Shown: positions 5,454-53,415 of the stretch, one piece after another
Numbering within the stretch: the stretch's first letter is position 1
How the letters are laid out: each line of letters begins with the position of its first letter
The notes under the pieces: generated by a model
What the model saw: the letters and a program-made list of their open reading frames with translations, nothing else
Databases searched by the model: none
What the model was told of the DNA's origin: nothing
Program-made: the position numbers and the translations under genes
IMG/VR virus record: IMGVR_UViG_3300021963_000023
Span: 62,001-126,000 of that record
Length of the DNA stretch: 64,000 nucleotides
Direction: 5' to 3' (one strand)

Positions 5454-5476
5454 ACTATTTATAATAAATAGAAATC

Positions 5477-5662
5477 ATGAATAAATTAGAAATGAAACGT
5501 AAGCACATTGAAGAAGCTAACATTTTACTGGACAAAAGGTCTAAAGAAGTTAACAATAAGGTGACTGCAGTTAGAGACACAACAAAAAAAGACCAGTTAA
5601 AAGACAAATTAATGAGTCAATTGAAAACCGGTAGTGGAAATTCCTTTGGTTTGGTGAAATAA
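5477..5662 (+). CDS. hypothetical small protein (monocistronic, probably late)
   Basis: 61 aa ORF with its own TATTTATA motif and terminator. Confidence 0.65.
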   Translation: MNKLEMKRKHIEEANILLDKRSKEVNNKVTAVRDTTKKDQLKDKLMSQLKTGSGNSFGLVK

Positions 5663-5665
5663 ATT

Positions 5666-5691
5666 AAAACCCTCAATATTGAGGGTTTTTT
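5666..5691 (+). terminator. intrinsic terminator
   Basis: AAAACCCTCA/TGAGGGTTTT stem followed by Ts. Confidence 0.78.
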
Positions 5692-5733
5692 ATTTGGTAT
5701 TTATTAGTTATATTATATTATAACAATAACACT

Positions 5734-5979
5734 ATGGCTATACTATCAGAAAGGATCGAAGGTAAAAATATATTCGTCGATATTAAATCAACTAATATTA
5801 AATCAGCATCATATAATACAGAAAGTAAAATATTGACAGTTGTATTCAATAATGGGACTATTTATGAATATTCAGATGTGTCTTGGGAATTGTTCACCAA
5901 ATTTAGAATGGGTGATTCACAGGGAGCATTTTTAAACGCTAAAATAAAGAATACACACGCGTACAAAAAGGTAAGTTAA
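5734..5979 (+). CDS. KTSC domain protein
   Basis: STNIKSASYN...LTVVFNNGTIYEY.DV...F....SQGAFLN..IK..Y matches the KTSC pattern. Confidence 0.85.
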   Translation: MAILSERIEGKNIFVDIKSTNIKSASYNTESKILTVVFNNGTIYEYSDVSWELFTKFRMGDSQGAFLNAKIKNTHAYKKVS

Positions 5980-6767
5980 TGAAAAATCTAGTAGACGAAC
6001 TTTTAGAATTATCAGATCCAGAAACAGACAGTAAGATTATTAAGTCATTTCAACTTAAAGATACTTTATGTCCAACCATTTTTGATAAGTCAGAAACTGG
6101 TGAATATGTGATAAGTAAAGAGGTTTCGGATAAGTTACTTGAAATAACAGATTCTTTTATTGACTTTTTGGGTGTTAGCTTTTTTATACATGATGTTATC
6201 TTAACGGGCTCATTAGCTAACTATAATTGGTCAGAATACTCAGATGTTGATTTACATATACTAATAGATATGGATGAGATTAATGATGGTAATACGAATT
6301 CGGTTGCTATGCATGACATCGTTAAAGAGTTTTTTGATGCTAAGAAGAACGTGTGGAATGAAAAACATGACATTAAGATAAAAGGATTTGATGTTGAGAT
6401 ATATGTTCAAGACGTTGACGAGGAGCATGTTTCATCTGGTGTTTATTCGGTTTTAAACAACGAATGGGTTGTTGAACCATCACTAAAAAAGGAGAGCATA
6501 GACGCTAATAAGATATTAGAAAAGGGTGAGTTTTTTGCAAAAAGAATTGATCAACTGATTGATTATCACCAGGATGGAAAAGATGTCGATAAGATGGCTA
6601 TAGACCTTAGAGACAAGTTTAAAAAATTTAGAAAAAGTGGATTAGAGACTGGTGGGGAATACTCATATGAGAACTTAACTTTCAAACTATTAAGAAGAAA
6701 TGGGTATATCGAGAAGTTAATGGATCTTAGAAATAGTATTTCAAACAAAAAATTATCCCTATCATAA
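5979..6767 (+). CDS. DNA polymerase beta-superfamily nucleotidyltransferase
   Basis: LTGSLANYNWSEYSDVDLHI (GS...DxD) with a third acidic residue in DVEIYVQD; coupled to KTSC by TAATG. Confidence 0.8.
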   Translation: MKNLVDELLELSDPETDSKIIKSFQLKDTLCPTIFDKSETGEYVISKEVSDKLLEITDSFIDFLGVSFFIHDVILTGSLANYNWSEYSDVDLHILIDMDEINDGNTNSVAMHDIVKEFFDAKKNVWNEKHDIKIKGFDVEIYVQDVDEEHVSSGVYSVLNNEWVVEPSLKKESIDANKILEKGEFFAKRIDQLIDYHQDGKDVDKMAIDLRDKFKKFRKSGLETGGEYSYENLTFKLLRRNGYIEKLMDLRNSISNKKLSLS

Positions 6768-6840
6768 TTGTTATCAGTATTTTTTTCCTTTTCCTCTGTA
6801 TTTATAGGATAAGAATAAGCTTATTTTTAATTTAAAAACA

Positions 6841-9071: not shown

Positions 9072-9079
9072 TTTTAACT

Positions 9080-10390: not shown

Positions 10391-10416
10391 AAAGTGGTCA
10401 ATTTGACCACTTTTTT
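10391..10416 (+). terminator. intrinsic terminator
   Basis: AAAGTGGTCA/TGACCACTTT stem followed by Ts. Confidence 0.75.
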
Positions 10417-10429
10417 CATATTTATATAT

Positions 10430-12217
10430 ATGAGTCAAAAAATAGAACAATTAAAAGAGTATGCTCGCATAATAAAAGATACTCCATACGCACTTAAAAC
10501 ATATCTTCAAACCTTTGATAATACACAGAGAAAGTTTGTACCATTAGAGTTGTTTCCGGATCAAATACAATTATTAAAAGATTACGAAACATATAACGAG
10601 AATATCACAAGAAAATATCGTCAAGCTGGTGTTACAACAGTAACGGCCGCATGGTTATCAAAAAAATTACAATTAGCAAAACCAGAAAACCCAGAAAGGG
10701 TTTTGATTATCGCAAACAAGCGTGATACCGCAATTGAGATGGCGAATAAAGTTCGTCACTTTTTAGATCAATGGCCAGAATGGATTAATGTGGGGTTTTC
10801 ACCAGATAAAAATTCAGAAAGTAGATTTAGGTTAAATAACGGATCAGAGGTAAAAGCTGTGGCCACATCTGCGGATGCTCTTCGTGGTTTTACACCAACG
10901 ATATTAGTATTTGATGAGGCCGCGTATATTGAGGCTGGAGATGACTTCTGGGCGGCTTCTATGGCCTCGTTATCAACCGGTGGTAAGATTATATTAATCT
11001 CAACGCCAAATGGCTACGATCCAATTTATTACGGTGTTTATGAACAAGCAATAAGAGGTATTAATGATTTTCATATAACCGATTTAAGATGGTTTAAAGA
11101 TCCTAGATATACTAAAGATTTAGTTTGGATTAAAGTTCCCGATATTGTGCATTACATGTTGAACAGAGAACAATATAATGATGATGAGATTATTTTAAAG
11201 GAATTTGATATAACAAAATACCAAGAATTAATGGATGAGGGTTATCAACCATATTCAAATTGGTTTGAGTCCATGTCCAAAAAATTCAAATATGACAAAA
11301 GAAAAATAGCACAAGAACTTGAATGTGATTTCTTGGGTTCCGGTGATAGCGTTATACCAAATGAAACAATGGAAAAAATCGCTAAAACAATGGTTAAAGT
11401 ACCAAAAGAAAAATATATGCAAGGTTTGCTTTGGCAATGGAATGAACCAGTTCAGGGTCATAGATATATTATGGGAGTTGATGTTAGTAGAGGAGATAGC
11501 GAGGATTTTTCATCAATTAATATTATTGATTTTGATGAAAGGGAGCAAGTTGTTGAATATGTTGGTAAAATGCCACCAGATGATTTAGCATCTGTCGCTT
11601 ATAAATGGGGTGTATTATATGATGCGTTTATTGTAATTGATATAACAGGTGGTATGGGTGTTGCAACATCAAGAAAATTGCAAGAAATGAATTATAAAAA
11701 CTTATTCATTGATGGTATTAATACCAAGAATGTTTGGGAATATAATGCAAAAGCAATGGAAAAAATACCTGGTATTAATTTTAACAATAAAAGAACACAA
11801 ATAGTTTCAGCATTTGAGGAACAATTGAGACATGATTTTATTGTTAGATCACATAGGCTTTTAAATGAACTCAATACCTTTGTTTATATAAATGGTAGAC
11901 CGGATCACATGAAAGGACAACATGACGATTCTATTATGAGTTTAGCAATTGCGTTATATGCTGGAGAGATATCGTTTACACAATTAGTTAGAAATGAACA
12001 GCAAAACAAAGCAATGTTAGATTCTTGGGTTATGTCTGAAAGAACATATCAATCGCCACAAACAGAAACATACTCATATGGTACTAGCTTTGATCAGGTT
12101 GGTATGATGCAGATTGATAGTTCACCATATGCTAAGAGTAATACTAACGGAACGCCAGCAAAAGAACAGTACAATCAATATTCTTGGTTGTTTGGAACAA
12201 ATAAAAAGGCTTTATAA
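10430..12217 (+). CDS. terminase large subunit (T4 gp17-like)
   Basis: RQAGVTT Walker A variant, LVFDEAA Walker B, ISTPNG, QELECDF, nuclease GVDVSRG and HDDSIMSLA; ATG 10430 chosen because it lies after the terminator and promoter motif. Confidence 0.93.
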   Translation: MSQKIEQLKEYARIIKDTPYALKTYLQTFDNTQRKFVPLELFPDQIQLLKDYETYNENITRKYRQAGVTTVTAAWLSKKLQLAKPENPERVLIIANKRDTAIEMANKVRHFLDQWPEWINVGFSPDKNSESRFRLNNGSEVKAVATSADALRGFTPTILVFDEAAYIEAGDDFWAASMASLSTGGKIILISTPNGYDPIYYGVYEQAIRGINDFHITDLRWFKDPRYTKDLVWIKVPDIVHYMLNREQYNDDEIILKEFDITKYQELMDEGYQPYSNWFESMSKKFKYDKRKIAQELECDFLGSGDSVIPNETMEKIAKTMVKVPKEKYMQGLLWQWNEPVQGHRYIMGVDVSRGDSEDFSSINIIDFDEREQVVEYVGKMPPDDLASVAYKWGVLYDAFIVIDITGGMGVATSRKLQEMNYKNLFIDGINTKNVWEYNAKAMEKIPGINFNNKRTQIVSAFEEQLRHDFIVRSHRLLNELNTFVYINGRPDHMKGQHDDSIMSLAIALYAGEISFTQLVRNEQQNKAMLDSWVMSERTYQSPQTETYSYGTSFDQVGMMQIDSSPYAKSNTNGTPAKEQYNQYSWLFGTNKKAL

Positions 12218-12262
12218 TTCAATAAAAATTGATTAGATTAATTACAATAGTATTTATATAGT

Positions 12263-14067: not shown

Positions 14068-14817
14068 ATGAACAAATTCGGAACGATTAAAACCAAAATG
14101 TTAACTAAAATAACTGAATCTTATTCTAAACAAAATAAGAATGAAGTAAAAGATATGTTAAACACAATTAAAGAAAACAAAGCATTTAAAGAAATGTATT
14201 TGTTTTATGAAGAAATTGAGAATAAATATTTTGACAATAAAGAGATCGCGATACTATATGTTGAGGGATTAAATACATATTTTGGTCAACCAATGGGTAA
14301 TTGGAATGATTTAAATGTCTTTTGCGAATCACTACATAAAAAATTGGGGGATATTAAAATTGAAACTAACGAACTATATGAATCTTTAGATATATTATCT
14401 GAAAAAGATTCATTATCAAATATTGAAAAAAAGGTTATTGCAAAAAAGAAACTAGTTGAACATTTAACAACAAAAAAGTCAGTAAAAACCATTGTTGAGG
14501 ATAGTACATATACAGCAAATGAAAATTTGTTGCATGCGGTATTAGTAAACAATTTTAACACATTATATGAGAATACATTATCTCAAGAAGATAAAGAAGC
14601 TCTTAAAAACATATTAGTATTAAATGGTGAGGAGTTGGTAACAAAAACATCTGAACTAAAAGAAGCTATCCTTACTAAGGTTCAAAATATACTATCAGAA
14701 TCTAAGGATACTGATTTAGGTGTAAAACTTGAATCAGTTAGAACTGAGGTTACCACAATGGAACCATCAAAATATAACTACTACAGATTAACACAATTAA
14801 AAAATGGTCTTGATTAA
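14068..14817 (+). CDS. hypothetical protein in head module
   Basis: 249 aa helical ORF directly after portal. Confidence 0.65.
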   Translation: MNKFGTIKTKMLTKITESYSKQNKNEVKDMLNTIKENKAFKEMYLFYEEIENKYFDNKEIAILYVEGLNTYFGQPMGNWNDLNVFCESLHKKLGDIKIETNELYESLDILSEKDSLSNIEKKVIAKKKLVEHLTTKKSVKTIVEDSTYTANENLLHAVLVNNFNTLYENTLSQEDKEALKNILVLNGEELVTKTSELKEAILTKVQNILSESKDTDLGVKLESVRTEVTTMEPSKYNYYRLTQLKNGLD

Positions 14818-15005
14818 TTCAGACCATTTTTTAACTTTTCCACATAAACGGCTTTTAATACTTCGGCTCTTCTTTTAACTGAAGGCTTAACAAACTTTTC
14901 TCTTTCCCTTAGTTTTTGGATTTGTTTAGTTTTTTGTACTTTACTTTTGTAACTTTTAAGAGCAGATTCAATGCTCTTTTCTTTTTTCATGTCAATTATA
15001 ATCAT
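14814..15005 (-). CDS. rpsU: ribosomal protein bS21 (phage-encoded)
   Basis: SIESALKSYKSK...LRERE.FVKPSVKRR...KAVY is the bS21 signature with a Bacteroidetes-type C-terminus. Confidence 0.92.
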   Translation of the reverse strand: MIIIDMKKEKSIESALKSYKSKVQKTKQIQKLREREKFVKPSVKRRAEVLKAVYVEKLKNGLN

Positions 15006-15104
15006 AATTTATAAATATTTTTATTTAAATTTTTGGAATATTAAGAAATTTTTCTTATTTTTTACTATATCACCATAATATAAGTAAAATTATGAAAAAA
15101 ATTA

Positions 15105-15533: not shown

Positions 15534-15575
15534 TTTAATTATCCTTGTATTTATATGGTATATTAATATATCATA

Positions 15576-16265: not shown

Positions 16266-16357
16266 ACAATAAAACATTAAAAAATCATCTATTTTGATAT
16301 TAAAAAAGAGATTTTTTTAATTACGTACATATTTATATAGTAAATCAAACAAAAATA

Positions 16358-21519: not shown

Positions 21520-21532
21520 GTTTATAAATATT

Positions 21533-22906: not shown

Positions 22907-22929
22907 CTTTTTATTTAATAAATATCAAA

Positions 22930-26867: not shown

Positions 26868-26881
26868 ATCAATAAATAGGT

Positions 26882-27580
26882 TTATTCTAAAAATCCACCT
26901 AAAACACCGTCATATAAAAGTTTATATCTTTTAAGGGATATTCTAATTTCTTTTGTTGATAATGATGTCATCTCTCTTAGAGACAGGAGGATTAAATTCT
27001 TATTGAACTTATTGCCATCACCTATTTGAAATATTTGGTCAAAATTGCTAAATATTTCTAAGAGGGCATAGCCTAGTTTTTTCTCATTATCCGTTAGATC
27101 TTCTTTTTCAATAAAATCTTCCAATTTGTTGGTTAGATTGATTATAACATTGGTATAATCTATATGATACTCATCAATTGTATATGAAAACTCAACCCTG
27201 CTTTCAATATCTTCAGATATGTCCTCATATGAAATACTCCTATTTTGCTCCTTGGTATCTTTTTGGATTGCCCCCATTAAGTAGTTCTTACAAATGGTTC
27301 CAAAATAGGAATAGGCTTTGTGGTTTTTTGTGTGATCAAACTTGTTGATCTTAGTTATTAAAAAAGACATGGTATCAGTATGAATCTCTTCAAATTCCAT
27401 GTCTTTTCTGTATAGTTTATAACGTCGAATAATTGATTCGACCATTATAATTAGGGGTTCACGTAAATATTCGTTGAATATCTTATTCCTTTCCGCATCG
27501 TCAGTACTTTCTAAGTATTTAACTACTGCCTTTTCTTGATCCTCCCCAAAATAAACTTTTTGGGTTCTTTTTCTTGGCAT
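26882..27580 (-). CDS. phage sigma factor, T4 gp55-like (late transcription)
   Basis: Region-2-like KINKFDHTKNHKAYSYFGTICKNYL resembles gp55 FD....N.F.YFT. Confidence 0.65.
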   Translation of the reverse strand: MPRKRTQKVYFGEDQEKAVVKYLESTDDAERNKIFNEYLREPLIIMVESIIRRYKLYRKDMEFEEIHTDTMSFLITKINKFDHTKNHKAYSYFGTICKNYLMGAIQKDTKEQNRSISYEDISEDIESRVEFSYTIDEYHIDYTNVIINLTNKLEDFIEKEDLTDNEKKLGYALLEIFSNFDQIFQIGDGNKFNKNLILLSLREMTSLSTKEIRISLKRYKLLYDGVLGGFLE

Positions 27581-31118: not shown

Positions 31119-31157
31119 AGTATGTAGTTTTTAATAATTCTTTATTACCTATAAATA

Positions 31158-33958: not shown

Positions 33959-33995
33959 ATTAATAAGTATATTCTAATTATATCCAAAAATAAAG

Positions 33996-36904: not shown

Positions 36905-36955
36905 GGAATCTTTTTTATATAAATATCAAACGCTATGAAAGATATTTATCTAAAT

Positions 36956-38407: not shown

Positions 38408-38430
38408 AATAAACAAACTATTTATAACAT

Positions 38431-38896: not shown

Positions 38897-41803
38897 ATGC
38901 AAGAGATTATTTCTCAAGAGGTTATCGAAACCTTCTTGAACGGGTCTGACCCCGAAAGATTCATTGTCGGTATCGAATATGACTACCGAAAGAATAAAAT
39001 TTACAAAATCATACAACACCCAGAAAGAGGTAAAATTGTTCTTGAGGACACGTTTACTCCGTTTCTTTGGGCCGGTGACTTATCTGGATTTAACTTCTAT
39101 AATGGAAGTAAAGAAAAGCAGAAAAAGAAAATGGCGGAATATGGTATATTAAGCACCAAACTTGAAACCATGGGTAACGATAGGCTAGAAGATGGGTTAA
39201 AATACCTAGTTAAGAGCACTAATGGTTATCAATCTCTATTGGCTTTTTTTAAGGACGGTGGAATCGATCCTTGGGGTGAAGACTTTAAATCTCAATTTCA
39301 GATATTATCACCAGCCGAACAGTATTTGGTTCAGAAGAAAAAAAGATTGTTTAAGGGTATTGAAGACTATTCCGAAGTTCACCGACTTGTATTTGATATT
39401 GAGACAACTGGTTTAGACCCAGAGACAAGCAATATCATTCTAATTGGAGTTAAAGATAATAGAGGGTATAGTAAATTATTAAACGCATATGGAGATGATG
39501 GTGAAAAAAGATGTATTGAAGAATTTTTTAAAATCATAAAAGAATTAAAGCCATCAATTATTGGTGGGTATAATTCAGCCGCGTTTGACTTACCATTCAT
39601 ATTTAAAAGAGCACAAATTTGTGGGCTGAATATTAGTAAGTTAACTAAGATTTTAAATGATAACCCGCTTAGAATAAAAGAGGGTAAATTAAAATTAGCA
39701 AATGAAGTGGAACCATATACACAGTATGTGTTATGGGGATTTAATATTGTAGATATTGCCCATGCGGTTAGAAGGGCACAAGCAATTAATTCTGAAATTA
39801 AAAGCTGGGGATTGAAATATATTACCACATATCTAGAAAAAGAAAAAGCAAATCGTGTGTATGTTGATGGTGCCTTTATTTCTAAAATATATCTTGAAAA
39901 TCAGAGTTATTATGTTAATCCTAAAACAGGAAAATATAAGAAAATTGGTGATCCAGGTACTGATGACTTGTTAGAAAAATATCCAGGTAAATTTGAAATA
40001 TGGCCTGGCCAAAGAATTGTTGAACAGTATCTTGATGATGACTTATATGAAACTATGGTTGTTGATGAATCATTTAGTCAATCAACATTTTTATTATCTA
40101 AGGTTATCCCAACAACATATGAAAGAATATCGACAATGGGTACAGCAACTCTTTGGAAAATATTAATGCTTGCCTGGTCATATGATAATAATTTAGCAAT
40201 ACCAGCAAAAGATGAAAAACGTCCATTTACTGGAGGGTTATCTCGTTTATTAAATGTGGGTTATGCAAAGAACATTGTTAAGTTTGACTATGCGTCACTT
40301 TATCCATCTATTCAATTGGTCTATGATATATTTCCAGCGTGTGATGTAATGGGAGTTCAAAAATCAATGTTAAAATATTTCCGAGATATTCGTATTAAAT
40401 ATAAACATCTTGCCAGTTCATTAGCAAAAACAAGCCCTGTTGAAGCTGAAATGTATGATAGAAAACAATTACCAATCAAGATTTTTATCAACGCATATTT
40501 TGGTAGTTTATCCGCACCACACGTATTCCCTTGGGGAGAAATGGATTCAGGTGAAACTATTACCTGTATTGGTCGTCAGTGTTTAAGAATGATGATTATG
40601 TTCTATATGAATAAAGGATATAAACCACTTGTAATGGATACTGATGGTGTGAATTTTGAAACACCAGAAGGAATTGCAGAAACAAGATATATTGGTAAAG
40701 GATTAAATGAATTATCTATTGAAGGTAAGGAGTATCATGGAATTGAAGCAGACACCGCAGAATTTAATGATATATTCATGAGGGGTGAAATGGGGTTAGA
40801 TATTGATTATGTTGCTCCGGCATGTATTAATGTGTCTCGTAAGAACTACATTATTAAAATAATTAAAAAGGGAAAGGAGAAGATAAAATTAACCGGTAAT
40901 ACCATTAAATCTAAACGACTTCAGCAATTCGTTGTTGAATTTTTAGATGAGGGGTTTACACATTTACTTAATGGTGACGGTCAATCTTTTTTAAATTTGT
41001 ATTATTCAACAATAAGAAAAATATATAATAAAGAAATACCGTTAGCTAAGATCGCTAGTAAAGCTCGTGTTAAACAAAGTGCTAATGACTATAAAAACCA
41101 TTGTAAGAAAACAACCAAGTCTGGTTCAACAATGTCTCGTCAAGCTCATATGGAATTAATATTAGAAAACGATTATCATGCAACATTGGGTGAAACAATT
41201 TATTATATAAACAACGGTGCAAAAAAAGGAGATGGTGATGTTAAGAAAATAACAAAGCCAACAAAAAAAGAGAAAGAAGATTATTTGCTTAAGCATGGTT
41301 GTGAAATACCAAAAGACTTTATTCAAGTTAATTGCTATATGATTCCTGAAAAAGAATTAGCTAACAATCCTAATATGACTGGTGAATATAATGTTGCTAG
41401 AAATGTTACAACTTTTAATAAAAGAATTGAACCTCTTTTAGTTGTGTTTAAACCAGAGATTAGGGATAACATTTTAATTGAAGACCCAAATGATGAACAA
41501 CAGTTTACGAAAAAACAATCTGAGTTGATTTCAGGGTACCCTCTTAAAGAAGGTGGTCAGGATAGTTTAGATGAAGTTATGACATTATCAGATGGTGAGG
41601 TTTTATTCTGGAACAAAGTGAATAAAGATCCATTCTTTATGTATGTTGAAGATAGTTTAAACAGCGTAGATCAAAAATGGGTTGATTACAATAGAAAGGT
41701 TGTTTCATTCCAAGCAGAAAGTGTTAAAGATATTCAAGATAATGAAATCATTGAGAATAACGGACACGACTATGCATATCACGCGTCAGTATATGTTGAT
41801 TAA
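38897..41803 (+). CDS. family B DNA polymerase
   Basis: Exo I FDIET, Exo II YNSAAFD, DYASLYPS, KIFINAYFG, MDTDG, RKNY. Confidence 0.95.
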   Translation: MQEIISQEVIETFLNGSDPERFIVGIEYDYRKNKIYKIIQHPERGKIVLEDTFTPFLWAGDLSGFNFYNGSKEKQKKKMAEYGILSTKLETMGNDRLEDGLKYLVKSTNGYQSLLAFFKDGGIDPWGEDFKSQFQILSPAEQYLVQKKKRLFKGIEDYSEVHRLVFDIETTGLDPETSNIILIGVKDNRGYSKLLNAYGDDGEKRCIEEFFKIIKELKPSIIGGYNSAAFDLPFIFKRAQICGLNISKLTKILNDNPLRIKEGKLKLANEVEPYTQYVLWGFNIVDIAHAVRRAQAINSEIKSWGLKYITTYLEKEKANRVYVDGAFISKIYLENQSYYVNPKTGKYKKIGDPGTDDLLEKYPGKFEIWPGQRIVEQYLDDDLYETMVVDESFSQSTFLLSKVIPTTYERISTMGTATLWKILMLAWSYDNNLAIPAKDEKRPFTGGLSRLLNVGYAKNIVKFDYASLYPSIQLVYDIFPACDVMGVQKSMLKYFRDIRIKYKHLASSLAKTSPVEAEMYDRKQLPIKIFINAYFGSLSAPHVFPWGEMDSGETITCIGRQCLRMMIMFYMNKGYKPLVMDTDGVNFETPEGIAETRYIGKGLNELSIEGKEYHGIEADTAEFNDIFMRGEMGLDIDYVAPACINVSRKNYIIKIIKKGKEKIKLTGNTIKSKRLQQFVVEFLDEGFTHLLNGDGQSFLNLYYSTIRKIYNKEIPLAKIASKARVKQSANDYKNHCKKTTKSGSTMSRQAHMELILENDYHATLGETIYYINNGAKKGDGDVKKITKPTKKEKEDYLLKHGCEIPKDFIQVNCYMIPEKELANNPNMTGEYNVARNVTTFNKRIEPLLVVFKPEIRDNILIEDPNDEQQFTKKQSELISGYPLKEGGQDSLDEVMTLSDGEVLFWNKVNKDPFFMYVEDSLNSVDQKWVDYNRKVVSFQAESVKDIQDNEIIENNGHDYAYHASVYVD

Positions 41804-42915
41804 ATAATATTAAATGGACTTGGCATGGCTCTGAATTTCAGGGCCTTGTTTAAGTTCTCTGCTTCATTACCTTTTCTTTCAAGCATTTTATCAGGACGAA
41901 GTCTTTCTAATCTTAATGATAATTCTTCATTAAGCTTCATTCTTTCATCTTTTGCTTCTGTAAGTAATGTTGAGTAATCTAATTTTACATCACTATCTGG
42001 AACTTTAAGATCTCCAGAAAATTTACCATAGATTCTACCAAGTGATTCTTTGCAATATGTTGTAAGATACTTTCTAACCCAGTTTTGGGCTGGTCTGTTT
42101 AATTCGTCCCAAGCTAGTTGTTGTGTCATAACATCTGATGGTAATTTAATAACATCTTTGTTTTCAGCTAAACAGTTATCTCTATCCATGGTATCATAAT
42201 ACCAATACCATACTTTACTATTATATTTCGTTGTGTTATTAAAATCAAATCTTCCGCCAGGAACGTTCGATAAGTGAATGTATTTTATACCGTTTGGACC
42301 GGCTGTAATTCTATATGTCAAATCTCCACCAATTAATCTATTTTTAATGTTTCTATCTTGCATTCTAAGTAGTAAGTCAAACGCAGGTAACATGAAATAA
42401 GACCCCGAACCACCTACTTGAGCAAATCCACCCATACCACCGAAACCACCGCCTCCTATGCCACCAAAACCACCAAGAAATGGATCTACAATAGAGTCGG
42501 TTAATTCAGCTCTACTAAACCATAATAATTCGTTTATTTCTCTACCTGCTGGTATCTCATATATTTGTTGACCACTAACTAAATCAACATAATCCTTTTT
42601 TAATATCCATGGCCCATCGGCTTGTAAACCAACAATTTTAGAATAAGAATATGTGTATTGATTTTCAAAATTCATATCCCTGGTTGTAAACGCTCTAGTT
42701 AATGATTGATTATCAACGTCTAATCCAACTAGTGAAGACCATTGTGATTCTATTAACCAATCACTTACATATTGTTCATATTCATTTACAGACATTTCTA
42801 AAAAAGAGTCCATTTGCTCTTCAGTTAGTTCTACGCCTCTAACAGGCATACCTAATAAATGTAGAATTTGGCTATAAAGTTTTTCCTTTTCAGAAACGCT
42901 AATTACTGTACTCAT
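41800..42915 (-). CDS. neck protein (T4 gp13-like)
   Basis: LLGMPVRGVELTEEQM N-terminus, WVRKY...KE.LG..YGKF C-terminus. Confidence 0.78.
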   Translation of the reverse strand: MSTVISVSEKEKLYSQILHLLGMPVRGVELTEEQMDSFLEMSVNEYEQYVSDWLIESQWSSLVGLDVDNQSLTRAFTTRDMNFENQYTYSYSKIVGLQADGPWILKKDYVDLVSGQQIYEIPAGREINELLWFSRAELTDSIVDPFLGGFGGIGGGGFGGMGGFAQVGGSGSYFMLPAFDLLLRMQDRNIKNRLIGGDLTYRITAGPNGIKYIHLSNVPGGRFDFNNTTKYNSKVWYWYYDTMDRDNCLAENKDVIKLPSDVMTQQLAWDELNRPAQNWVRKYLTTYCKESLGRIYGKFSGDLKVPDSDVKLDYSTLLTEAKDERMKLNEELSLRLERLRPDKMLERKGNEAENLNKALKFRAMPSPFNII

Positions 42916-42956
42916 TGAGTCGTGCTTTTCTTATAAATACCGGATTTATTATAAAA

Positions 42957-44708: not shown

Positions 44709-44761
44709 ACATTATGAAATATAAGTAATTACAAACACTTTCTAAACTATTTATAGATATT

Positions 44762-45274: not shown

Positions 45275-45275
45275 A

Positions 45276-46511
45276 ATGGCCATACCTAAAAGAAAAACAG
45301 ATATTCAAATATACAAGGGTAAACAACTTACCGAAAGAAGACAAGAACTATTGGAAAAAATAACCAAGTCAGATTCGTATCTTCCTGATTCTGTTTTACA
45401 TGACGATTTAGATTCTGGAATGTTAGAGTTTATTAAGAAAAACTTTGTTGTTGTTTCTGATGGTAGTCAAATACCGGTAATCCCAAAAATATTAACAATT
45501 CAAAGATGGGCCCAAATTATGAATACTTGGGAGTTTTCTGATGATGACGGTAATCTAAAGGTTCCATTTGTTGGTGTTATAAGAAGACCAGATGTTCAAC
45601 CAGGAACTAACCCATCAGTTATCAGAACAATACCAGATAGATTACAATTTCATTATGCTTCAGTTGCAACTTGGAATGGAACACAAATGGGCGCTGATGT
45701 ATATAAGATACCTCAACCGGTGGCCGTAGACATAACATTTGAAGTAACCATTGTTTGTACGAAACTTAGAGAATTAAATAGATTTAATAAAATTGTTCTA
45801 CAGAAATTTGCCTCAAGACAAGCTTACACCATTGTAAAAGGTCATTATATTCCAATTATAATGGATAAGGTTGAAGATAATTCTCCTGTTGATCAAATAG
45901 ATGGGCGTAGATTTTATATGCAAACATATCAATTTACCATGTTAGGGTTTCTTATCGACCAAGATGAATTTGAGGTTAAACCAGCGGTTAGTAGATTTTT
46001 CTTAATGAATGAGTTCGCAAAAAATTCTAATTTTCAGAAAAAATATATTAATAAAACAATTGATATAACGGTTGCTACGTTTTTGGCGGATGGCTTACAG
46101 ACCGCATTTAGTGTTGGTGAAAGTATTGGTATTTTATTTAATGTGACAATTAATGGTATAATACAAGAAAGAGACGTTAACTACTTCCATGTTGCTGGAA
46201 CTTCTAAAATTACCTTCCCAGAAGCACCTTATGAAGGAAGTAATGTTACAGTAACTTATTATAAAGGTAGAAATAGTGTTTTTATTGATAATTACGGAAA
46301 ACCAATTCAGGTAGAAACAGAACATTTTATATATAATGGGTCAACTTTGGTGTTTACGGTTATGAACGCAATTAATAGTGTTGTTGGTGTAGATATTAAC
46401 GGTCTTGCTGATGAAGAGGGTGTTGGTTTCAATATCACTAGTGAAACTCAAATTACCTTAACTTCAGCGCCTGTACTTGGATCAAGAATTGGTGTTAATT
46501 ATTTATATTAA
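45276..46511 (+). CDS. tail terminator/completion protein (gp15-like) with C-terminal repeat extension
   Basis: PQPVAVDITFEV, position before sheath; two beta-rich repeats at C-terminus. Confidence 0.55.
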   Translation: MAIPKRKTDIQIYKGKQLTERRQELLEKITKSDSYLPDSVLHDDLDSGMLEFIKKNFVVVSDGSQIPVIPKILTIQRWAQIMNTWEFSDDDGNLKVPFVGVIRRPDVQPGTNPSVIRTIPDRLQFHYASVATWNGTQMGADVYKIPQPVAVDITFEVTIVCTKLRELNRFNKIVLQKFASRQAYTIVKGHYIPIIMDKVEDNSPVDQIDGRRFYMQTYQFTMLGFLIDQDEFEVKPAVSRFFLMNEFAKNSNFQKKYINKTIDITVATFLADGLQTAFSVGESIGILFNVTINGIIQERDVNYFHVAGTSKITFPEAPYEGSNVTVTYYKGRNSVFIDNYGKPIQVETEHFIYNGSTLVFTVMNAINSVVGVDINGLADEEGVGFNITSETQITLTSAPVLGSRIGVNYLY

Positions 46512-46666
46512 TCCTCATCATATAGGTCAGTTTTTTTAGGCTTACAAGTGTCTTCTATTAATTTTTCTAAAATTTTATAAATTTTAAGCCCTTTCTTATC
46601 ACAGTATGATTTTAGCATCTCGTGGTGTTTTTCACTGATTTTCACATTTTTAGTTTTGTTTTCCAT
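46508..46666 (-). CDS. ribbon-helix-helix-like DNA-binding protein (52 aa), not in ORF track
   Basis: MENKTKNVKISEKHHEMLKSYCDKKGLKIYKILEKLIEDTCKPKKTDLYDED. Confidence 0.65.
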   Translation of the reverse strand: MENKTKNVKISEKHHEMLKSYCDKKGLKIYKILEKLIEDTCKPKKTDLYDED

Positions 46667-46670: not shown

Positions 46671-46700
46671 AAAGATAAATAATGATAAAAAAGGATAAAT
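46671..46700. repeat. three 10-bp direct repeats (AANGATAAAW)
   Basis: aaagataaat aatgataaaa aaggataaat. Confidence 0.5.
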
Positions 46701-46792
46701 AACTATCTAAATACAGAAAATTTGAGAAATCTTTGCTTAAAACAAAGATATTTATTTGGAAAGAATAAAATTATTTAACCAAACATTTATCA

Positions 46793-49630: not shown

Positions 49631-49647
49631 TATTACAATAAAATAAG

Positions 49648-49678
49648 AATGGGGATGGCTAAAAACCTCCCCATTTTT
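49648..49678 (+). terminator. intrinsic terminator after sheath
   Basis: AATGGGGA/TCCCCATT stem followed by Ts. Confidence 0.75.
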
Positions 49679-49680
49679 GT

Positions 49681-49808
49681 ATAGTATATTGAATATCAGT
49701 AAATTAGTTAATTAGAATAAAAGAATATAAGTAAATCAGAATATCAGAAATATTAGTATATTAGTACATTAGAATATTAGTATTTTAGAATTTTAGTAAG
49801 TTAGTAGC
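49681..49808. repeat. tandem array of 16 degenerate 8-mers (TTAGWAWA)
   Basis: Parsed by hand: atagtata ttgaata tcagtaaa ttagttaa ttagaata aaagaata taagtaaa tcagaata tcagaaata ttagtata ttagtaca ttagaata ttagtatt ttagaatt ttagtaag ttagtagc. Confidence 0.85.
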
Positions 49809-49921
49809 AAAAAGCTAAGGAAAAAAAACGAGAAAAACAACTATTTTACAAAATAAATTTTATTTCACATATTGATATATTTATAGGAAAGAAATAAACA
49901 CAAAATTATAATACAAAAACA

Positions 49922-50410: not shown

Positions 50411-50435
50411 TATTACTTTTAAAATAGATTTATTT

Positions 50436-50468: not shown

Positions 50469-50484
50469 CGTTCCATGTGGAACC
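50469..50484. promoter_or_regulatory. parS-like palindrome
   Basis: cGTTCCAtGTGGAACc, 13/16 match to TGTTCCACGTGGAACA, intergenic. Confidence 0.5.
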
Positions 50485-50549
50485 TTTTTCATTACCAATT
50501 GATTTTCTAATAAATTATACTTATATTAAAAGAAACAAATTAATTTAAT

Positions 50550-51290
50550 ATGGATAATATAAACCCAATGGTTGCATATGATGTGGTATCCTTACCATCT
50601 CAAGGTGTACACTATTCCAACGGAAAGAAAACATTAAGAGTAGCTTATCTAACGGCTGCAGATGAAAATATTCTAATGTCCCCCAATTTAATACAATCCG
50701 AAACGGTTGTTGATGAATTATTAAAAAGAAAAATATTGGATAAAGACCTTAGTTATGAGGATCTTGTTGAGGAAGATAAACAAGCTATTTTAATATTTTT
50801 AAGAAATACAGCATTTGGTACAGAATATACATTAACATTAACCGATCCAGCAACTAAGAAATCTTTTGAGGGAATACTAGATTTATCTGTATTAAAGGTT
50901 AAAGATTTTAAATTAGTTGCTGATTCAAATGGCGAATATTCATACATATTACCAATGTCTAAGAAAAATATAACATTTAACTTCTTAACAAACACACAAG
51001 AAAAAGAATTACAGAACATTAAAGAATCAAGTGGATCATCGGTTTCTCCAGTTAATACTAAAAAACTTGAGATGATGATTAAATCTATTGATGGTCAACG
51101 AGATCAAATGGCAATATATCAATTTATTCAAAATCTACCAATCAAAGATTCACAAGATTTTAAAAAATTCGTATCAGAAAATAAACCAGGTTTAGACCTA
51201 ATAGTTGATGTAATCGCCCCGTCAGGAGAAAAAGTCCCAGTTTTGGTTGACTTTGGGGTGGAGTTTTTTCGTCCCTTCTACGGAATATAA
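50550..51290 (+). CDS. tail assembly chaperone / baseplate hub assembly protein (gp26-like)
   Basis: VSLPSQG.HY, LTAADENIL, D..AILIFLR, ends FFRP; between tube and tape measure. Confidence 0.75.
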   Translation: MDNINPMVAYDVVSLPSQGVHYSNGKKTLRVAYLTAADENILMSPNLIQSETVVDELLKRKILDKDLSYEDLVEEDKQAILIFLRNTAFGTEYTLTLTDPATKKSFEGILDLSVLKVKDFKLVADSNGEYSYILPMSKKNITFNFLTNTQEKELQNIKESSGSSVSPVNTKKLEMMIKSIDGQRDQMAIYQFIQNLPIKDSQDFKKFVSENKPGLDLIVDVIAPSGEKVPVLVDFGVEFFRPFYGI

Positions 51291-51414
51291 GAAAAACCAA
51301 ATACAGATTATTTTATTTCTTTTAACAAAGGGATTTACTTATCAAGACATATTAATATTACCAATACACGAAAGAAGTAATATCATTGGCGCTTTATTAG
51401 AAAATAACGGATAA
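51271..51414 (+). CDS. C-terminal extension of tail chaperone, reached by probable frameshift
   Basis: ATG-less +1 frame VPSTEYKKNQIQIILFLLTKGFTYQDILILPIHERSNIIGALLENNG after TTTTTTCGT. Confidence 0.65.
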   Translation, partial: VPSTEYKKNQIQIILFLLTKGFTYQDILILPIHERSNIIGALLENNG

Positions 51415-51429
51415 AACTATTTATATAAT

Positions 51430-53376
51430 ATGGCAGATAATAGAGAAGATTTTTTAAAATTTTTAAAAAGCTTAGGTATTGATGATTCAGATGCAAAAGC
51501 TGGTGCGGATAGGTATCAAAAATCTATCGACGAATTAGCATCAAAAGCATCTAGAGCATCAAGAACATCAACCACTAGTGGTACAGGTAGTGTTATTAAC
51601 GCACTAGGCGCTGGATTTATCGATCAACAGGTAAACACTTTAGGTAGAATTAGTACAAGTACAGGTAAAGCAATACTTGAAGGTATTAATAAAAGTGCCT
51701 CATTTAATCCAGTAACAATTATAAAGGGTGTATTAGATGGTGCATTAAAGGGTGGTGAAGCCATACTTGGGGATTTAGCTGAATTAGACAAAGAATTACT
51801 AGAACGAGTTAGAGGTGCAGGAGGATATGTAGGGGATGCTGCAACAGACATGATGAGATCAGTTAGGGTTGCTATGATTGCAGCGCAAGAAGCTGGTGCA
51901 TCTACAGATGATACATTAGGTGCTGTAAAAAGCCTAATGGAAAACTCTGAAAGAATGTCTATCTATGCAGAAAAAACAATTTCAGATGGAATGCTAGCTT
52001 CCGTTGCTTTTACCAAAAATGCTAGAACAATATTAGAAAATGCTGAAAACTTTAGAAACGTTGGTATAGGTTTAGATGATGCATCTAAATCAATTACCGC
52101 CATAGGTATGGATTCGGTAAAGTTAGGTTTAAATGCTAAAGCAACTTCTGAAACATTAATTAAAAATTTAGGTAGCTTAAATGCATATGGATTCCAAAAC
52201 GGAATTAAAGGTTTAGGTAAAATGGTCCAAGAGGCACAATCACTTAAAATCAATATGGATGATGTGCTAAAGGTTGCTGATAAATTATATGATCCAGAAA
52301 GTGCAATTAACCTTGCTGCAAATCTACAAGTTGTTGGAGGTGCGTTTGGTGATTTAAACGATCCAATTAAATTAATGTATGATGCAACAAATAATGTTGA
52401 ATCATTACAAACAAGTATTATTGGCGCTGCTAGAAGTTTAGCAACATATAATGTTGAACAAGGTAGGTTTGAAGTAACAGGAGTCAATTTAAGACGTGCT
52501 AAAGCTATGTCTGATGCTTTAGGTATATCAATGGGTGAATTAACTAATATGGCTGTTAAAGGGGCTGCTAAGTTCGAAGCGATGAGCCAATTAGACATAT
52601 TCCCATCTTTAAATGATGAACAAAAAGAGTTTGTTTCAAATTTAGCAACAATGAAAGATGGTAAAGTTGGTTTTGATATTCCTAAAAGTATGGTCGAAAG
52701 ACTTGGTTTAGATAATGTTAAAGATGGTTTCGTTGGATTAAGTGATTTATCAGATAAACAAATTGTGCAACTACAAGCGATGCAAAAAAGTGCAGCAGAT
52801 GAAAAACCAATAGACATCGCAAGAAATCAATTTAATGAAACAACAAAAATATTAAATGTTGCAACAGCAATTTACTTAAGGATGATGGATGATGGAAGAA
52901 AGGGACCAATAGGTCAAACAGCATCAAAAGGTATGGAAGCGGCAGCTAATTTTATGCAAAAAACATTTAACCCATCTGAAGATAGTACTGGAGAAACAGT
53001 TAAAAAATTAGCTGGCGCAGCTATAGATGCTGGTGGTGAGGCAATGTCTGCAGTTGCTGATTATATGAAAAATTTAAGTCCAGAGATGATGGAAACACTT
53101 GGTTTACTTAAGAAAAAACTTAGTGAAGCAACAAAAGATATAAATGTTGAAGATATTAAAAATAAAGCAGGAGAAATGCTTGAAAAAGGCGGCGAGAAAG
53201 CAAAAGAAGCATATGATGAAATTAAAAAATTCTTTGGGGAACTTACTGTAAAGGTTGATATTAATAGTAATAGCCCAGAATTAGCCGGTATTGTTGTTAA
53301 TGAAATATCTAGAAATCCACAATTAAGAGCTGATCTCGCATCGAACATAGTTAAGAACACTAAAAACTACACATAA
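51430..53376 (+). CDS. tape measure-like protein
   Basis: Ala/Gly-rich helical 648 aa ORF after tube and chaperone. Confidence 0.7.
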   Translation: MADNREDFLKFLKSLGIDDSDAKAGADRYQKSIDELASKASRASRTSTTSGTGSVINALGAGFIDQQVNTLGRISTSTGKAILEGINKSASFNPVTIIKGVLDGALKGGEAILGDLAELDKELLERVRGAGGYVGDAATDMMRSVRVAMIAAQEAGASTDDTLGAVKSLMENSERMSIYAEKTISDGMLASVAFTKNARTILENAENFRNVGIGLDDASKSITAIGMDSVKLGLNAKATSETLIKNLGSLNAYGFQNGIKGLGKMVQEAQSLKINMDDVLKVADKLYDPESAINLAANLQVVGGAFGDLNDPIKLMYDATNNVESLQTSIIGAARSLATYNVEQGRFEVTGVNLRRAKAMSDALGISMGELTNMAVKGAAKFEAMSQLDIFPSLNDEQKEFVSNLATMKDGKVGFDIPKSMVERLGLDNVKDGFVGLSDLSDKQIVQLQAMQKSAADEKPIDIARNQFNETTKILNVATAIYLRMMDDGRKGPIGQTASKGMEAAANFMQKTFNPSEDSTGETVKKLAGAAIDAGGEAMSAVADYMKNLSPEMMETLGLLKKKLSEATKDINVEDIKNKAGEMLEKGGEKAKEAYDEIKKFFGELTVKVDINSNSPELAGIVVNEISRNPQLRADLASNIVKNTKNYT

Positions 53377-53415
53377 TAAAACAATTAATTATCTATTTAT
53401 TAGATAAAAGAATAG

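What the first reader, a model, noticed from the sequence alone, without database searches (positions are those of the whole stretch)
5456..53401. Sense-strand TATTTAT(A) late-promoter motif, the reverse complement of the T4 late box, often only 3-6 nt before the ATG
Seen: the motif precedes starts on the + strand at 5456, 6799, 10419, 12251, 15548, 16330, 36943, 38419, 44748, 46749, 49878, 51418 and 53394, and on the - strand at 15017, 21530, 22924, 26878, 31157, 36925 and 42939. Nearly all are structural or assembly genes. It is absent directly before DNA polymerase, helicase, dUTPase and clpC. Nine gaps to the ATG are 3-6 nt (terminase 3, portal 4, rpsU 4, 21519 gene 3, 26867 gene 3, 36956 gene 5, 38431 gene 4, 44762 gene 6, tape measure 4). 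Known: T4 gp55 reads TATAAATA as a lone -10 box with the start site a few nt downstream. Inference: the gp55-like sigma at 26882-27580 reads a different box here, and many late mRNAs are leaderless.
Basis: partly seen in the sequence, partly recalled or inferred. Interest (0 to 1): 0.8.

Follow-up and report, generated by a model that had tools for sequence, protein, structure and literature searches.

The report
Conserved phage late-promoter box, often leaderless
An 8-base signal, TATTTATA, sits just upstream of the virion and assembly genes of this large freshwater phage and its relatives; it is almost certainly the phage's late promoter, and it lies so close to many start codons that those messages should have almost no leader.

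Summary
All 20 listed sites and all nine short gaps check out. TATTTAT is the most enriched 7-mer upstream of gene starts (21 of 41 copies, p about 1e-21). It is 3.7-fold over AT-matched shuffles of intergenic DNA, 24 of 25 intergenic copies point at a gene start, and it is 4-fold depleted inside genes.

In hundreds of related contigs the box is kept before the same 13 genes (375 of 378 distinct upstream sequences). It is absent before seven operon-internal or replication genes (0 of 146).

It is also the top upstream 7-mer in two cultured relatives: Flavobacterium phage immuto (leaders mostly 12-31 nt) and Microcystis phage Mel-JY01 (17-43 nt, with GGAG). So it follows the phage lineage, not one host's translation signals. 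An invariant copy also precedes a conserved structured non-coding RNA.

Best reading: a single-element late promoter, probably read by the phage sigma at 26882-27580. That protein is sigma-70 family and only weakly gp55-like. In this clade terminase, portal, bS21 and others should be leaderless or nearly so.

No RNA 5'-end data could be obtained. I found no earlier description of the box.

The parts
10419..10426 (+). Late box TATTTATA, 3 nt before the terminase ATG (10430). It directly follows terminator 10391-10413.
   Evidence: Kept in 47 of 48 distinct orthologue upstream sequences, mostly 4 nt from the 7-mer to the ATG.
12251..12258 (+). Late box, 4 nt before the portal ATG (12263).
   Evidence: Kept in 57 of 58 orthologue sequences, gap 4-6 from the 7-mer.
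15010..15017 (-). Late box, 4 nt before the ATG of ribosomal protein bS21 (14814-15005). This is a lone reverse-strand gene inside the head module.
   Evidence: Exact box in 16 of 42 orthologue sequences; other clades have TACTTAT or TAnnTTT-like boxes.
15548..15555 (+). Late box, 20 nt before the prohead protease gene (15576).
   Evidence: Kept in 44 of 44.
16330..16337 (+). Late box, 20 nt before the 398-aa gene (16358). It presumably also serves the major capsid gene 17581-19314, which has no box of its own.
   Evidence: Kept in 44 of 44; MCP 0 of 34. Published RNA profiles show MCP co-transcribed with its upstream gene (PMC9723584).
5456..5463 (+). Late box after terminator 5427-5447, 13 nt before the 61-aa ORF (5477).
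5698..5705 (+). Late box (TATTTATT) after terminator 5666-5689, 28 nt before the 81-aa gene (5734).
   Evidence: Kept in 24 of 32.
6799..6806 (+). Late box, 34 nt before the 342-aa gene (6841) that heads the operon running to 10387.
   Evidence: Kept in 29 of 29.
21523..21530 (-). Late box, 3 nt before the ATG at 21519 (176-aa gene).
   Evidence: Kept in 10 of 11, gap 4-7.
22917..22924 (-). Late box (TATTTATT), 10 nt before the 457-aa gene (22906).
   Evidence: Kept in 13 of 13.
26871..26878 (-). Late box (TATTTATT), 3 nt before the 124-aa gene (26867). It lies immediately downstream of the sigma gene.
   Evidence: The same 'sigma gene, box, next gene' order occurs in contigs whose sigma is only 34% identical (L164, L166).
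31150..31157 (-). Late box before the PhoH-like gene (30390-31118).
   Evidence: PhoH also has the box in phage immuto.
36918..36925 (-). Late box, 13 nt before the 252-aa gene (36904), in a 51-nt divergent intergenic region.
36943..36950 (+). Late box (TATTTATC), 5 nt before the ATG at 36956. The start is ambiguous because an in-frame ATG at 36935 lies upstream of the box.
38419..38426 (+). Late box, 4 nt before the 122-aa gene (38431).
   Evidence: Kept in 9 of 15, always gap 5 from the 7-mer.
42932..42939 (-). Late box, 16 nt before the head-tail adaptor-like gene (41800-42915).
   Evidence: Kept in 22 of 22.
44748..44755 (+). Late box, 6 nt before the 170-aa gene (44762), in a 53-nt divergent region opposite the helicase gene.
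   Evidence: Kept in 28 of 28, gap 4-7.
46749..46756 (+). Late box (TATTTATT), 36 nt before the tail sheath gene (46793).
   Evidence: Kept in 24 of 24.
49878..49885 (+). Late box, 36 nt before the tail tube gene (49922).
   Evidence: Kept in 29 of 29.
51418..51425 (+). Late box, 4 nt before the 648-aa gene (51430).
   Evidence: Kept in 5 of 5.
53394..53401 (+). Late box (TATTTATT), 14 nt before the 1591-aa gene (53416).
   Evidence: Kept in 23 of 23.
46674..46701 (-). Two further boxes (first bases at 46701 and 46681) before a 52-aa ORF (46508-46666), divergent from the sheath gene.
2704..2832 (-). Invariant ATATATTTATAT (box 2825-2832) followed by about 100 nt of conserved non-coding sequence with three hairpins, the last an intrinsic terminator. 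Candidate late-box-driven small RNA.
   Evidence: 16 sequences; 10 of 21 pairs have compensatory changes. No Rfam family.
26882..27580 (-). Phage sigma-70-family protein (232 aa), the candidate reader of the box.
   Evidence: Homologues in immuto and Mel-JY01.
10391..10413 (+). Intrinsic terminator hairpin and T-run ending 3-5 nt before the terminase box. The stem covaries among relatives.

Best explanation
TATTTAT(A), never preceded by T, is the core and apparently the only element of this phage lineage's late promoters. It works like a T4 late promoter: a lone -10-type box without a -35 partner. It marks the start of each late transcription unit, covering head, neck and tail genes, terminase, bS21, PhoH and one small RNA.

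The most likely reader is host RNA polymerase core carrying the phage sigma encoded at 26882-27580. This step is inferred.

In the clade to which the window belongs, about nine of the 21 units have the ATG 3-6 nt after the 8-mer, which is where initiation is expected. Those mRNAs should begin at or within about 3 nt of the AUG, so they would be leaderless or nearly so. This step is also inferred.

Replication and early genes lack the box. Some of them carry host-type Bacteroidetes promoters (TTTG ... TAnnTTTG).
For: Statistics in the window: top upstream k-mer; 3.7-fold over AT-matched intergenic shuffles; 24 of 25 intergenic copies oriented toward a gene start; 4-fold depleted inside genes.

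Phylogenetic footprint: the box is kept before 13 orthologous genes in 375 of 378 distinct upstream sequences while the flanks diverge. It is found before 0 of 146 sequences for MCP, DNA polymerase and five other operon-internal genes.

Promoter-type contexts:
- Directly after intrinsic terminators (5427, 5666, 10391). The terminase terminator covaries in relatives.
- In 51- and 53-nt divergent intergenic regions.
- Before the lone reverse-strand bS21 gene.
- Before a conserved structured non-coding RNA with no start codon.

Independence from host translation signals: the same box is the top upstream 7-mer in Flavobacterium phage immuto, using the deposited gene starts (18 of 42 copies, p = 1e-15). 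The same holds in Microcystis phage Mel-JY01, where GGAG-containing leaders of 17-43 nt lie between box and ATG (12 of 55 copies). Both phages carry a homologue of the sigma.

The box is found next to sigma genes only 34% identical (L164, L166). A TATTTA-core variant, ACTATTTA, occurs in L165, whose sigma is 37% identical.

Sigma identity:
- Pfam region 2 in 33 of 78 family members, and region 4 in none.
- The best single-sequence PDB hit is T4 gp55.
- The AlphaFold model (pLDDT 93.6) matches almost only sigma factors.

Leaderless reading:
- The gap has a hard minimum, with a pile-up at 4 nt from the 7-mer.
- The base before the ATG is a pyrimidine in 102 of 113 short-gap sites against 38 of 166 long-gap sites, as expected for a pyrimidine(-1)/purine(+1) start.
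- The terminase architecture of T-run, box, 3 nt, ATG leaves no room for a leader.

Published metatranscriptomes of this phage group show that the head region is not one operon, that MCP is co-transcribed with its upstream gene, and that bS21 is co-expressed with structural genes (PMC9723584). This matches the box-defined units.
Against: The sigma-to-box link is correlative, and the sigma's similarity to gp55 is marginal.

With T4 geometry (box at -13 to -6) the start site would fall at or beyond the G of the ATG in gap-3 genes. Even the host sigma-A geometry (-12 to -5) puts +1 one base too far, so the leaderless model needs an unusually short box-to-start distance.

Leaderless mRNAs are rare in the presumed host phylum: 5.5% in F. 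psychrophilum (PMC9723704) and 3.7% of UTRs under 10 nt in B. thetaiotaomicron (PMC7366714).

Orthologue counts are phylogenetically non-independent.

bS21 and the 38431 gene keep the exact box in only part of the relatives (16 of 42 and 9 of 15).
Confidence: 0.72

Rival explanations
1. The box is a promoter, but the short-gap genes are not leaderless. Their functional mRNAs would come from upstream promoters by read-through, or initiation at these boxes would follow T4 spacing and serve only downstream genes.
For: T4 geometry (box at -13 to -6, PMC1524935) would place +1 inside or after the ATG. Leaderless mRNAs are rare in Bacteroidetes. In immuto and Mel-JY01 the same genes have leaders of 16-34 nt.
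Against: A covarying terminator sits directly upstream of the terminase box in all relatives. bS21 (99-nt intergenic region) and the 44762 gene (53 nt) stand at divergent or isolated positions with no co-directional upstream gene. The gap distribution is sharply peaked at one value. A pyrimidine at -1 is specific to this class.
Confidence: 0.25
2. The box is read by the host primary sigma, alone or with a phage appropriator or activator, and not by the phage sigma at 26882-27580.
For: The box starts with TA and shares T at positions 5 and 7 with the host TAnnTTTG box, and sits at a similar distance from the start. The phage sigma is only weakly gp55-like.
Against: The TTG of the host box is highly conserved (PMC9723704) and is missing here. 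The same box is used by a relative reported on a cyanobacterium, whose primary sigma reads different promoters. The box co-occurs with the sigma family down to 34% identity. Early genes in the window use distinct TAnnTTT(G)-type boxes.
Confidence: 0.15
3. The motif acts at the RNA level, for example as a translation enhancer, a recruiting site for bS21-containing ribosomes, or a processing site. It would not be a promoter.
For: It lies very close to many start codons. The phage encodes its own bS21. The host phylum does not use Shine-Dalgarno pairing.
Against: The distance to the ATG ranges from 3 to 43 nt. In Mel-JY01 a GGAG lies between the motif and the ATG. The motif follows terminators. 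It is invariant upstream of a non-coding RNA with no ORF. It is strongly avoided on the sense strand inside genes, though an RNA-level signal could produce that avoidance too.
Confidence: 0.05
4. The box is read by a phage-encoded non-canonical RNA polymerase encoded outside the window, with initiation only about 2 nt after the box, at the conserved purine.
For: The purine two bases after the 8-mer is kept in 19 of 21 sites. The box-to-ATG distance is shorter than any sigma-70-type geometry comfortably allows.
Against: No RNA polymerase subunit was found in the 64 kb examined. The paper on this phage group never mentions an RNA polymerase. A sigma factor is conserved throughout the lineage.
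Confidence: 0.04

Closest known systems
T4-type late promoters (TATAAATA read by gp55 with gp33 and the gp45 clamp)
   Same: Both are a single AT-rich 8-bp box with no -35 element, upstream of virion genes of a T4-like myovirus (T4-type portal, terminase, protease, MCP, sheath and tube). Both phages carry a small sigma in which only region 2 is recognisable. The boxes are 6 of 8 identical in the same orientation.
   Different: The two central bases differ (AA in T4, TT here), whereas known T4-like variants keep the TAAATA core (nATAAATA, CTAAATA; PMC1524935). The box must lie 1-2 nt closer to the start site if the short-gap genes are translated from it. The sigma is 232 aa against 185, with an extra C-terminal helical domain, and is only marginally similar to gp55. 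No gp33 or gp45 homologue was identified in the window.
Bacteroidetes primary-sigma promoters (-7 box TAnnTTTG at -12 to -5, with an optional -33 TTTG)
   Same: Both have TA at the same end of an 8-bp box close to the start site, and the presumed host phylum is the same. Host-type examples exist in the window before the ClpC-like gene (box starting at 4920, minus strand) and the 195-aa gene (33992, minus strand).
   Different: The conserved TTG is replaced by ATA. There is no -33 element. The box is also used by a relative with a cyanobacterial host.
bS21-encoding freshwater Bacteroidetes phages (Chen et al. 2022, PMC9723584)
   Same: The window matches this group's description. It has a reverse-strand bS21 inside the terminase-portal-protease-MCP module, comes from a 251-kb contig, and has very many close relatives in public metagenome and viral contig collections. 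Published late co-expression of bS21 with structural genes fits the box-defined units.
   Different: The paper's text contains none of the words promoter, motif, sigma or leaderless. The box, the sigma and the leaderless architecture are additions made here.
Thermus phage P23-45 middle and late promoters
   Same: From my own recollection, not checked here because the paper is not held: -35-less promoters placed so that many middle and late transcripts are leaderless. A review confirms only that they are of the extended -10 class (PMC7403470).
   Different: Those promoters are read by the host sigma-A with phage modifiers gp39 and gp76, in a host phylum where leaderless mRNAs are common. Here a phage sigma is the likely reader and the host phylum rarely uses leaderless mRNAs.

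Membership tests
T4-type late transcription system (promoter) | A single -10-type box with no -35 element, upstream of late (virion) genes. | tested here: met
   No information content upstream of the box beyond 'not T' at -1. The gene list is dominated by head, neck and tail genes.
T4-type late transcription system (promoter) | Box sequence TATAAATA, or variants that keep the TAAATA core. | tested here: not met
   The box is TATTTATA. TATAAAT shows no comparable sense-strand association, and its intergenic copies are mostly the other strand of the same sites.
T4-type late transcription system (promoter) | Box at -13 to -6 relative to the transcription start. | not testable with these tools
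   No 5'-end data. The 3-4 nt box-to-ATG gaps are incompatible with this spacing if those genes are translated from these promoters.
T4 gp55 family (protein) | Sequence homology to gp55. | tested here: inconclusive
   phmmer best PDB hit 7d7c_F (gp55), E = 0.009. The family profile hits SigA region 2 at E = 0.005 and gp55 at E = 0.11. hhalign against T4 gp55: probability 55% over 83 columns. gp55 is not among the top 50 Foldseek PDB hits.
T4 gp55 family (protein) | Dependence on the co-activator gp33 and the sliding clamp gp45. | not testable with these tools
   The 124-aa protein downstream of the sigma gene shows no gp33 similarity. No clamp was identified in the window.
Sigma-70 family | Region 2 fold and sequence. 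| tested here: met
   Pfam Sigma70_r2 in 33 of 78 family members, best E = 4e-07. NCBIfam sigma models give weak hits. Foldseek hits in PDB and BFVD are almost all sigma factors, though with weak E-values.
Sigma-70 family | Region 4 reading a -35 element. | tested here: not met
   No Sigma70_r4 hit in any of 78 members, and no -35-like conservation. The fold of the C-terminal domain (residues 142-231) was not resolved separately.
Bacteroidetes sigma-A promoter | TAnnTTTG box with conserved TTG at -12 to -5. | tested here: not met
   The box lacks TTG. Genuine TAnnTTTG sites occur elsewhere in the window, before non-late genes (PMC9723704).
Leaderless mRNA | Transcript 5' end at, or within a few nt of, the start codon. 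| not testable with these tools
   Only indirect support: the terminator-box-ATG architecture, the hard minimum gap, and a pyrimidine at -1 in 90% of short-gap sites.
Leaderless mRNA | AUG start codon with no upstream alternative start. | tested here: met
   ATG starts all nine short-gap genes. The varying gap breaks the frame upstream of the portal ATG among relatives. The exception is the 36956 gene, which has an in-frame ATG at 36935.

The most novel reading that the evidence does not exclude
This phage clade has moved key late genes (terminase, portal, its own bS21 and others) onto leaderless mRNAs, in a host phylum where such mRNAs are rare. The phage-encoded bS21, itself made from a leaderless late message, would retune host ribosomes to favour these messages. 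The late promoter box and the phage ribosomal protein would then form one coupled transcription-translation takeover system.
Probability: 0.15. Interest if true: 0.85.

Novelty: new variant of a known kind. Interest (0 to 1): 0.6.

Why it matters
These phages have very many relatives in public lake-water and other metagenomes: more than 590 related contigs in IMG/VR and more than 7,900 sigma homologues. They are thought to infect freshwater Bacteroidetes.

A strict 7-8 bp late box gives three practical things:
- a way to annotate late transcription units and correct start codons, for example terminase at 10430 rather than the GTG at 10394;
- a way to find late-expressed accessory genes (PhoH, bS21) and small RNAs;
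- a defined promoter-sigma pair for Bacteroidetes genetics, where standard expression signals fail.

The conserved terminator-box-ATG architecture makes the question of what the phage bS21 does directly testable: is it linked to translation of leaderless late mRNAs? Two cultured relatives that carry the same box (immuto on Flavobacterium sp. LMO8, and Mel-JY01) offer experimental systems.

Tried and rejected
It was replaced by three exact-protein look-ups, and two of those contigs were only about 1.3-1.5 kb.
- A -35-like or upstream element: none is shared by all sites. The TTAATTA-N6 seen before three head genes in the window is not kept in relatives, so it was rejected as a general element.
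- E. coli-type promoters: not enriched (89 against 91 expected, and 93 against 98.5).
- gp33 candidate: the 124-aa gene downstream of the sigma has no family hits and only spurious PDB hits.
- One-mismatch box variants: no association, except possibly TACTTAT.
- 'Real T4-type TATAAATA boxes on the other strand': rejected, because the box position is fixed relative to the downstream sense-strand ATG and 24 of 25 intergenic copies point at a gene start.
- Stop-codon recoding for the ORF-poor end of the window: rejected. It is one giant ORF running off the end.
- tRNA and Rfam scans: nothing found.
- Literature: no paper links TATTTAT(A) to a phage late promoter, and nothing on promoters was found under the names of immuto or Mel-JY01.
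- The P23-45 paper could not be read.

Full report
WHAT THE WINDOW IS

The window has 31% G+C and matches IMG/VR contig IMGVR_UViG_3300021963_000023 (251 kb).

It encodes these identifiable proteins:
- T4-type portal and large terminase
- prohead protease, tail sheath and tail tube
- major head protein
- a head-tail adaptor-like protein, PhoH and ribosomal protein bS21
- DNA polymerase, helicase and dUTPase
- a ClpC-like ATPase and an RNA ligase

The reverse-strand bS21 gene inside the terminase-portal-protease-MCP module matches the 'bS21 phages' of Chen et al. 2022 (PMC9723584). Those are predicted to infect freshwater Bacteroidetes.

The closest cultured relatives are distant. Flavobacterium phage immuto and Microcystis phage Mel-JY01 share about 37% portal identity with the window.

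THE OBSERVATION

All 20 listed sites and all nine quoted gaps are correct.

The whole window holds fewer TATTTAT copies than shuffles predict (41 against 55). The reason is that the word is avoided inside genes and concentrated before them.

- 20 of 41 copies are followed within 40 nt by an ATG opening a long ORF. The other 20 words of the same composition give 4-14 of 45-106 copies, and the reverse complement gives 5 of 41.
- In an unbiased scan of all k-mers in the -50..+3 windows, TATTTAT ranks first (21 of 41, p = 1.3e-21) and TATTTATA is the top 8-mer.
- Against dinucleotide-preserving shuffles of the intergenic DNA itself (80% AT), 25 copies are observed against 6.8 +/- 2.5 expected. 24 of 25 point toward a gene start.
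- Codon shuffling predicts 26.7 +/- 5.2 sense-strand copies within genes, and 6 are found.
- The position before the box is never T. The base after the 7-mer is A in 15 of 21 sites. No upstream element is shared.

CONSERVATION

Two scans of IMG/VR returned 80 loci each around the portal and sheath genes. Protein identity to the window ranged from 66% to 100%.

I located orthologous N-termini by tblastn and counted only distinct upstream sequences. The box is present before these genes:

| Gene | Box present |
|---|---|
| terminase | 47/48 |
| portal | 57/58 |
| protease | 44/44 |
| 16358 gene | 44/44 |
| 6841 gene | 29/29 |
| 22906 gene | 13/13 |
| 21519 gene | 10/11 |
| adaptor | 22/22 |
| 44762 gene | 28/28 |
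| sheath | 24/24 |
| tube | 29/29 |
| 53416 gene | 23/23 |
| 51430 gene | 5/5 |
| Total | 375/378 |

It is absent before these genes:

| Gene | Box present |
|---|---|
| MCP | 0/34 |
| 9080 gene | 0/30 |
| 19349 gene | 0/14 |
| DNA polymerase | 0/13 |
| 45276 gene | 0/34 |
| 58191 gene | 0/12 |
| baseplate gene 50550 | 0/9 |
| Total | 0/146 |

Flanking sequence diverges freely. Each gene keeps its own gap class: terminase and portal 4-8 nt from the 7-mer, protease 13-23, sheath and tube 33-40. These counts are not phylogenetically independent, but the pattern is unambiguous.

WHY IT IS A PROMOTER AND NOT A TRANSLATION SIGNAL

1. The box directly follows intrinsic terminators at 5427, 5666 and 10391. 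Upstream of terminase every relative has a GC hairpin with a different, compensating stem, then a T-run, then 1-3 nt, the box, and the ATG after a gap of mostly 3 nt (up to 7) from the 8-mer.

2. It occupies the 51-nt and 53-nt divergent intergenic regions at 36.9 kb and 44.7 kb. It also precedes the isolated reverse-strand bS21 gene, where a promoter must exist.

3. In phage immuto, using the depositors' gene starts, TATTTAT is again the top upstream 7-mer (18 of 42 copies, p = 1e-15). It lies before terminase, portal, PhoH, sheath, tube, hub and virion proteins, with leaders mostly 12-31 nt.

4. In Mel-JY01, reported on a cyanobacterium, it is again the top upstream 7-mer (12 of 55 copies). 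Leaders there are 17-43 nt and contain GGAG. The box therefore follows the phage lineage, while the leader follows the host's translation system.

5. An invariant ATATATTTATAT at 2832 (minus strand) is followed by about 100 nt of conserved non-coding sequence. It forms three hairpins, the last a terminator, and 10 of 21 pairs show compensatory changes across 16 relatives. No ORF is conserved there.

6. Published RNA profiles of this phage group show three things: the head region is not one operon, MCP is co-transcribed with its upstream gene, and bS21 is expressed together with structural genes (PMC9723584). This is what the box map predicts, with a box at 16330 and none before MCP.

WHO READS IT

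The 232-aa protein at 26882-27580 belongs to a very large family: 7,935 of the 8,000 candidates scored had E <= 0.001, and the representative library holds 1,300 clusters with E <= 0.001.

- Pfam region 2 is detected in 33 of 78 diverse members. Region 4 is detected in none.
- Its best single-sequence PDB hit is T4 gp55 (E = 0.009).
- The family profile prefers SigA region 2 (E = 0.005), with gp55 at E = 0.11.
- hhalign against T4 gp55 gives 55% probability over 83 collinear columns.
- A confident AlphaFold model (pLDDT 93.6) matches almost only sigma factors in PDB and BFVD. E-values are weak and gp55 is not among the top hits.

It is therefore a phage sigma-70-family protein, gp55-like at most distantly.

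Its link to the box is correlative. Homologues exist in immuto and Mel-JY01. In contigs whose sigma is only 34% identical, the gene after the sigma again carries TATTTATA. One lineage at 37% identity shows ACTATTTA(A/C) at the syntenic sites.

The host primary sigma is a less likely reader. Its TTG is highly conserved (PMC9723704) and is absent from the box. Host-type TTTG...TAnnTTTG promoters stand before non-late genes in the window, at 4920 (minus strand) and 33992 (minus strand).

RELATION TO THE T4 BOX

The reverse complement of TATAAATA is indeed TATTTATA. But the T4 box is nearly palindromic, so the same 8-mer is also the T4 box in the same orientation with its two central A's replaced by T's.

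The simpler description is a same-orientation variant, 6 of 8 identical. Described T4-like variants keep TAAATA (PMC1524935), so this is a new box variant.

LEADERLESS READING

Nine of 21 units in the window have 3-6 nt between the 8-mer and the ATG. Across relatives the gap distribution has a hard floor and a sharp peak at that floor.

The base before the ATG is a pyrimidine in 102 of 113 short-gap sites but in only 38 of 166 long-gap sites, where A dominates. That fits a pyrimidine(-1)/purine(+1) start at the A of the ATG.

The terminator-box-ATG architecture of terminase leaves no room for a leader.

Against this:
- T4 geometry (-13 to -6) and even host geometry (-12 to -5) would put +1 one to two bases too far downstream for the commonest class.
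- Leaderless mRNAs are only about 4-6% in Bacteroidetes.
- The cultured relatives use ordinary leaders.

I rate the promoter identity at about 0.85, the sigma assignment at about 0.6, and the leaderless (0-3 nt) reading at about 0.6.

LIMITS

- The start of the 36956 gene is ambiguous, with an in-frame ATG at 36935.
- The 'tape measure' label is unverified.
- Only 64 kb of the 251-kb genome was seen, so a clamp, a gp33-like factor or polymerase genes elsewhere cannot be excluded.

NOVELTY

Full-text searches found no paper that describes this box. The paper on this phage group contains none of the words promoter, motif, sigma or leaderless.

It is a new variant of a known kind: a phage-sigma-type, single-element late promoter. 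It comes with an unusual, conserved leaderless arrangement that may connect to the phage's own bS21.

Noticed in passing
window 2704-2842 (minus strand): Candidate small RNA of about 100 nt. An invariant late box is followed by conserved non-coding sequence with three hairpins, 10 of 21 pairs have compensatory changes in 16 relatives, and it ends in an intrinsic terminator. No Rfam family matches. The 27-codon ORF seen in the window is not conserved.
   Followed up: partly
window 46674-46701 (minus strand) and 46508-46666 (minus strand): Two tandem late boxes 20 nt apart precede a 52-aa ORF that is divergent from the sheath gene. This is possibly an unannotated small late gene.
   Followed up: no
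window 4890-4950 (minus strand) and 33958-33995 (minus strand): Host-type Bacteroidetes promoters (TTTG, about 19-21 nt, TAnnTTTG) before the ClpC-like ATPase gene and a 195-aa gene. Several other non-late genes have TAnnTTT boxes only 6-9 nt before their ATG (2687, 30346, 44708), so short leaders may not be limited to late genes.
   Followed up: partly
window 50518 (plus), 44727 (minus), 33969 (minus), 2436 (minus); bS21 upstream in L032, L040, L043, L050, L056 and others: The variant box TACTTAT(A) recurs before the T4-type baseplate gene 50550, the helicase, two small genes, and bS21 in other clades. It may be a weaker or differently timed promoter class.
   Followed up: partly
L165:1100-14900: In a syntenic contig whose sigma is 37% identical, the sites equivalent to the window's boxes read ACTATTTA(A/C) rather than TATTTAT. 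This may be co-variation of box and sigma, but it rests on only three sites.
   Followed up: partly
window 15006-15104: In the divergent region between bS21 and the 142-aa gene at 15105, a CCAAAAA element (TTTTTGG on the other strand) is conserved in many relatives upstream of the bS21 box. The 142-aa gene is probably the 'bS21_CN' neighbour of Chen et al.
   Followed up: no
window 5456-5470: The box at 5456 is half of a small inverted repeat (TATTTATAATAAATA). This gives the only intergenic copy that points at a gene end (5470, minus strand).
   Followed up: no
window 53416-58191 and 58501-64000: Two giant ORFs with no family hits for the first: 1591 aa, and more than 1832 aa running off the window end. 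They lie downstream of the tail module and are presumably baseplate or fibre proteins. The ORF-poor look of 58.5-64 kb is due to this single ORF, not to stop-codon recoding.
   Followed up: partly
window 10394-10430: The longest-ORF start of terminase (GTG at 10394) lies inside the upstream terminator hairpin. The conserved start is the ATG at 10430.
   Followed up: yes
window 49631-49877: The 291-nt gap between the sheath and tube genes (49631-49921) has no called ORF upstream of the tube box at 49878. It was not examined further.
   Followed up: no
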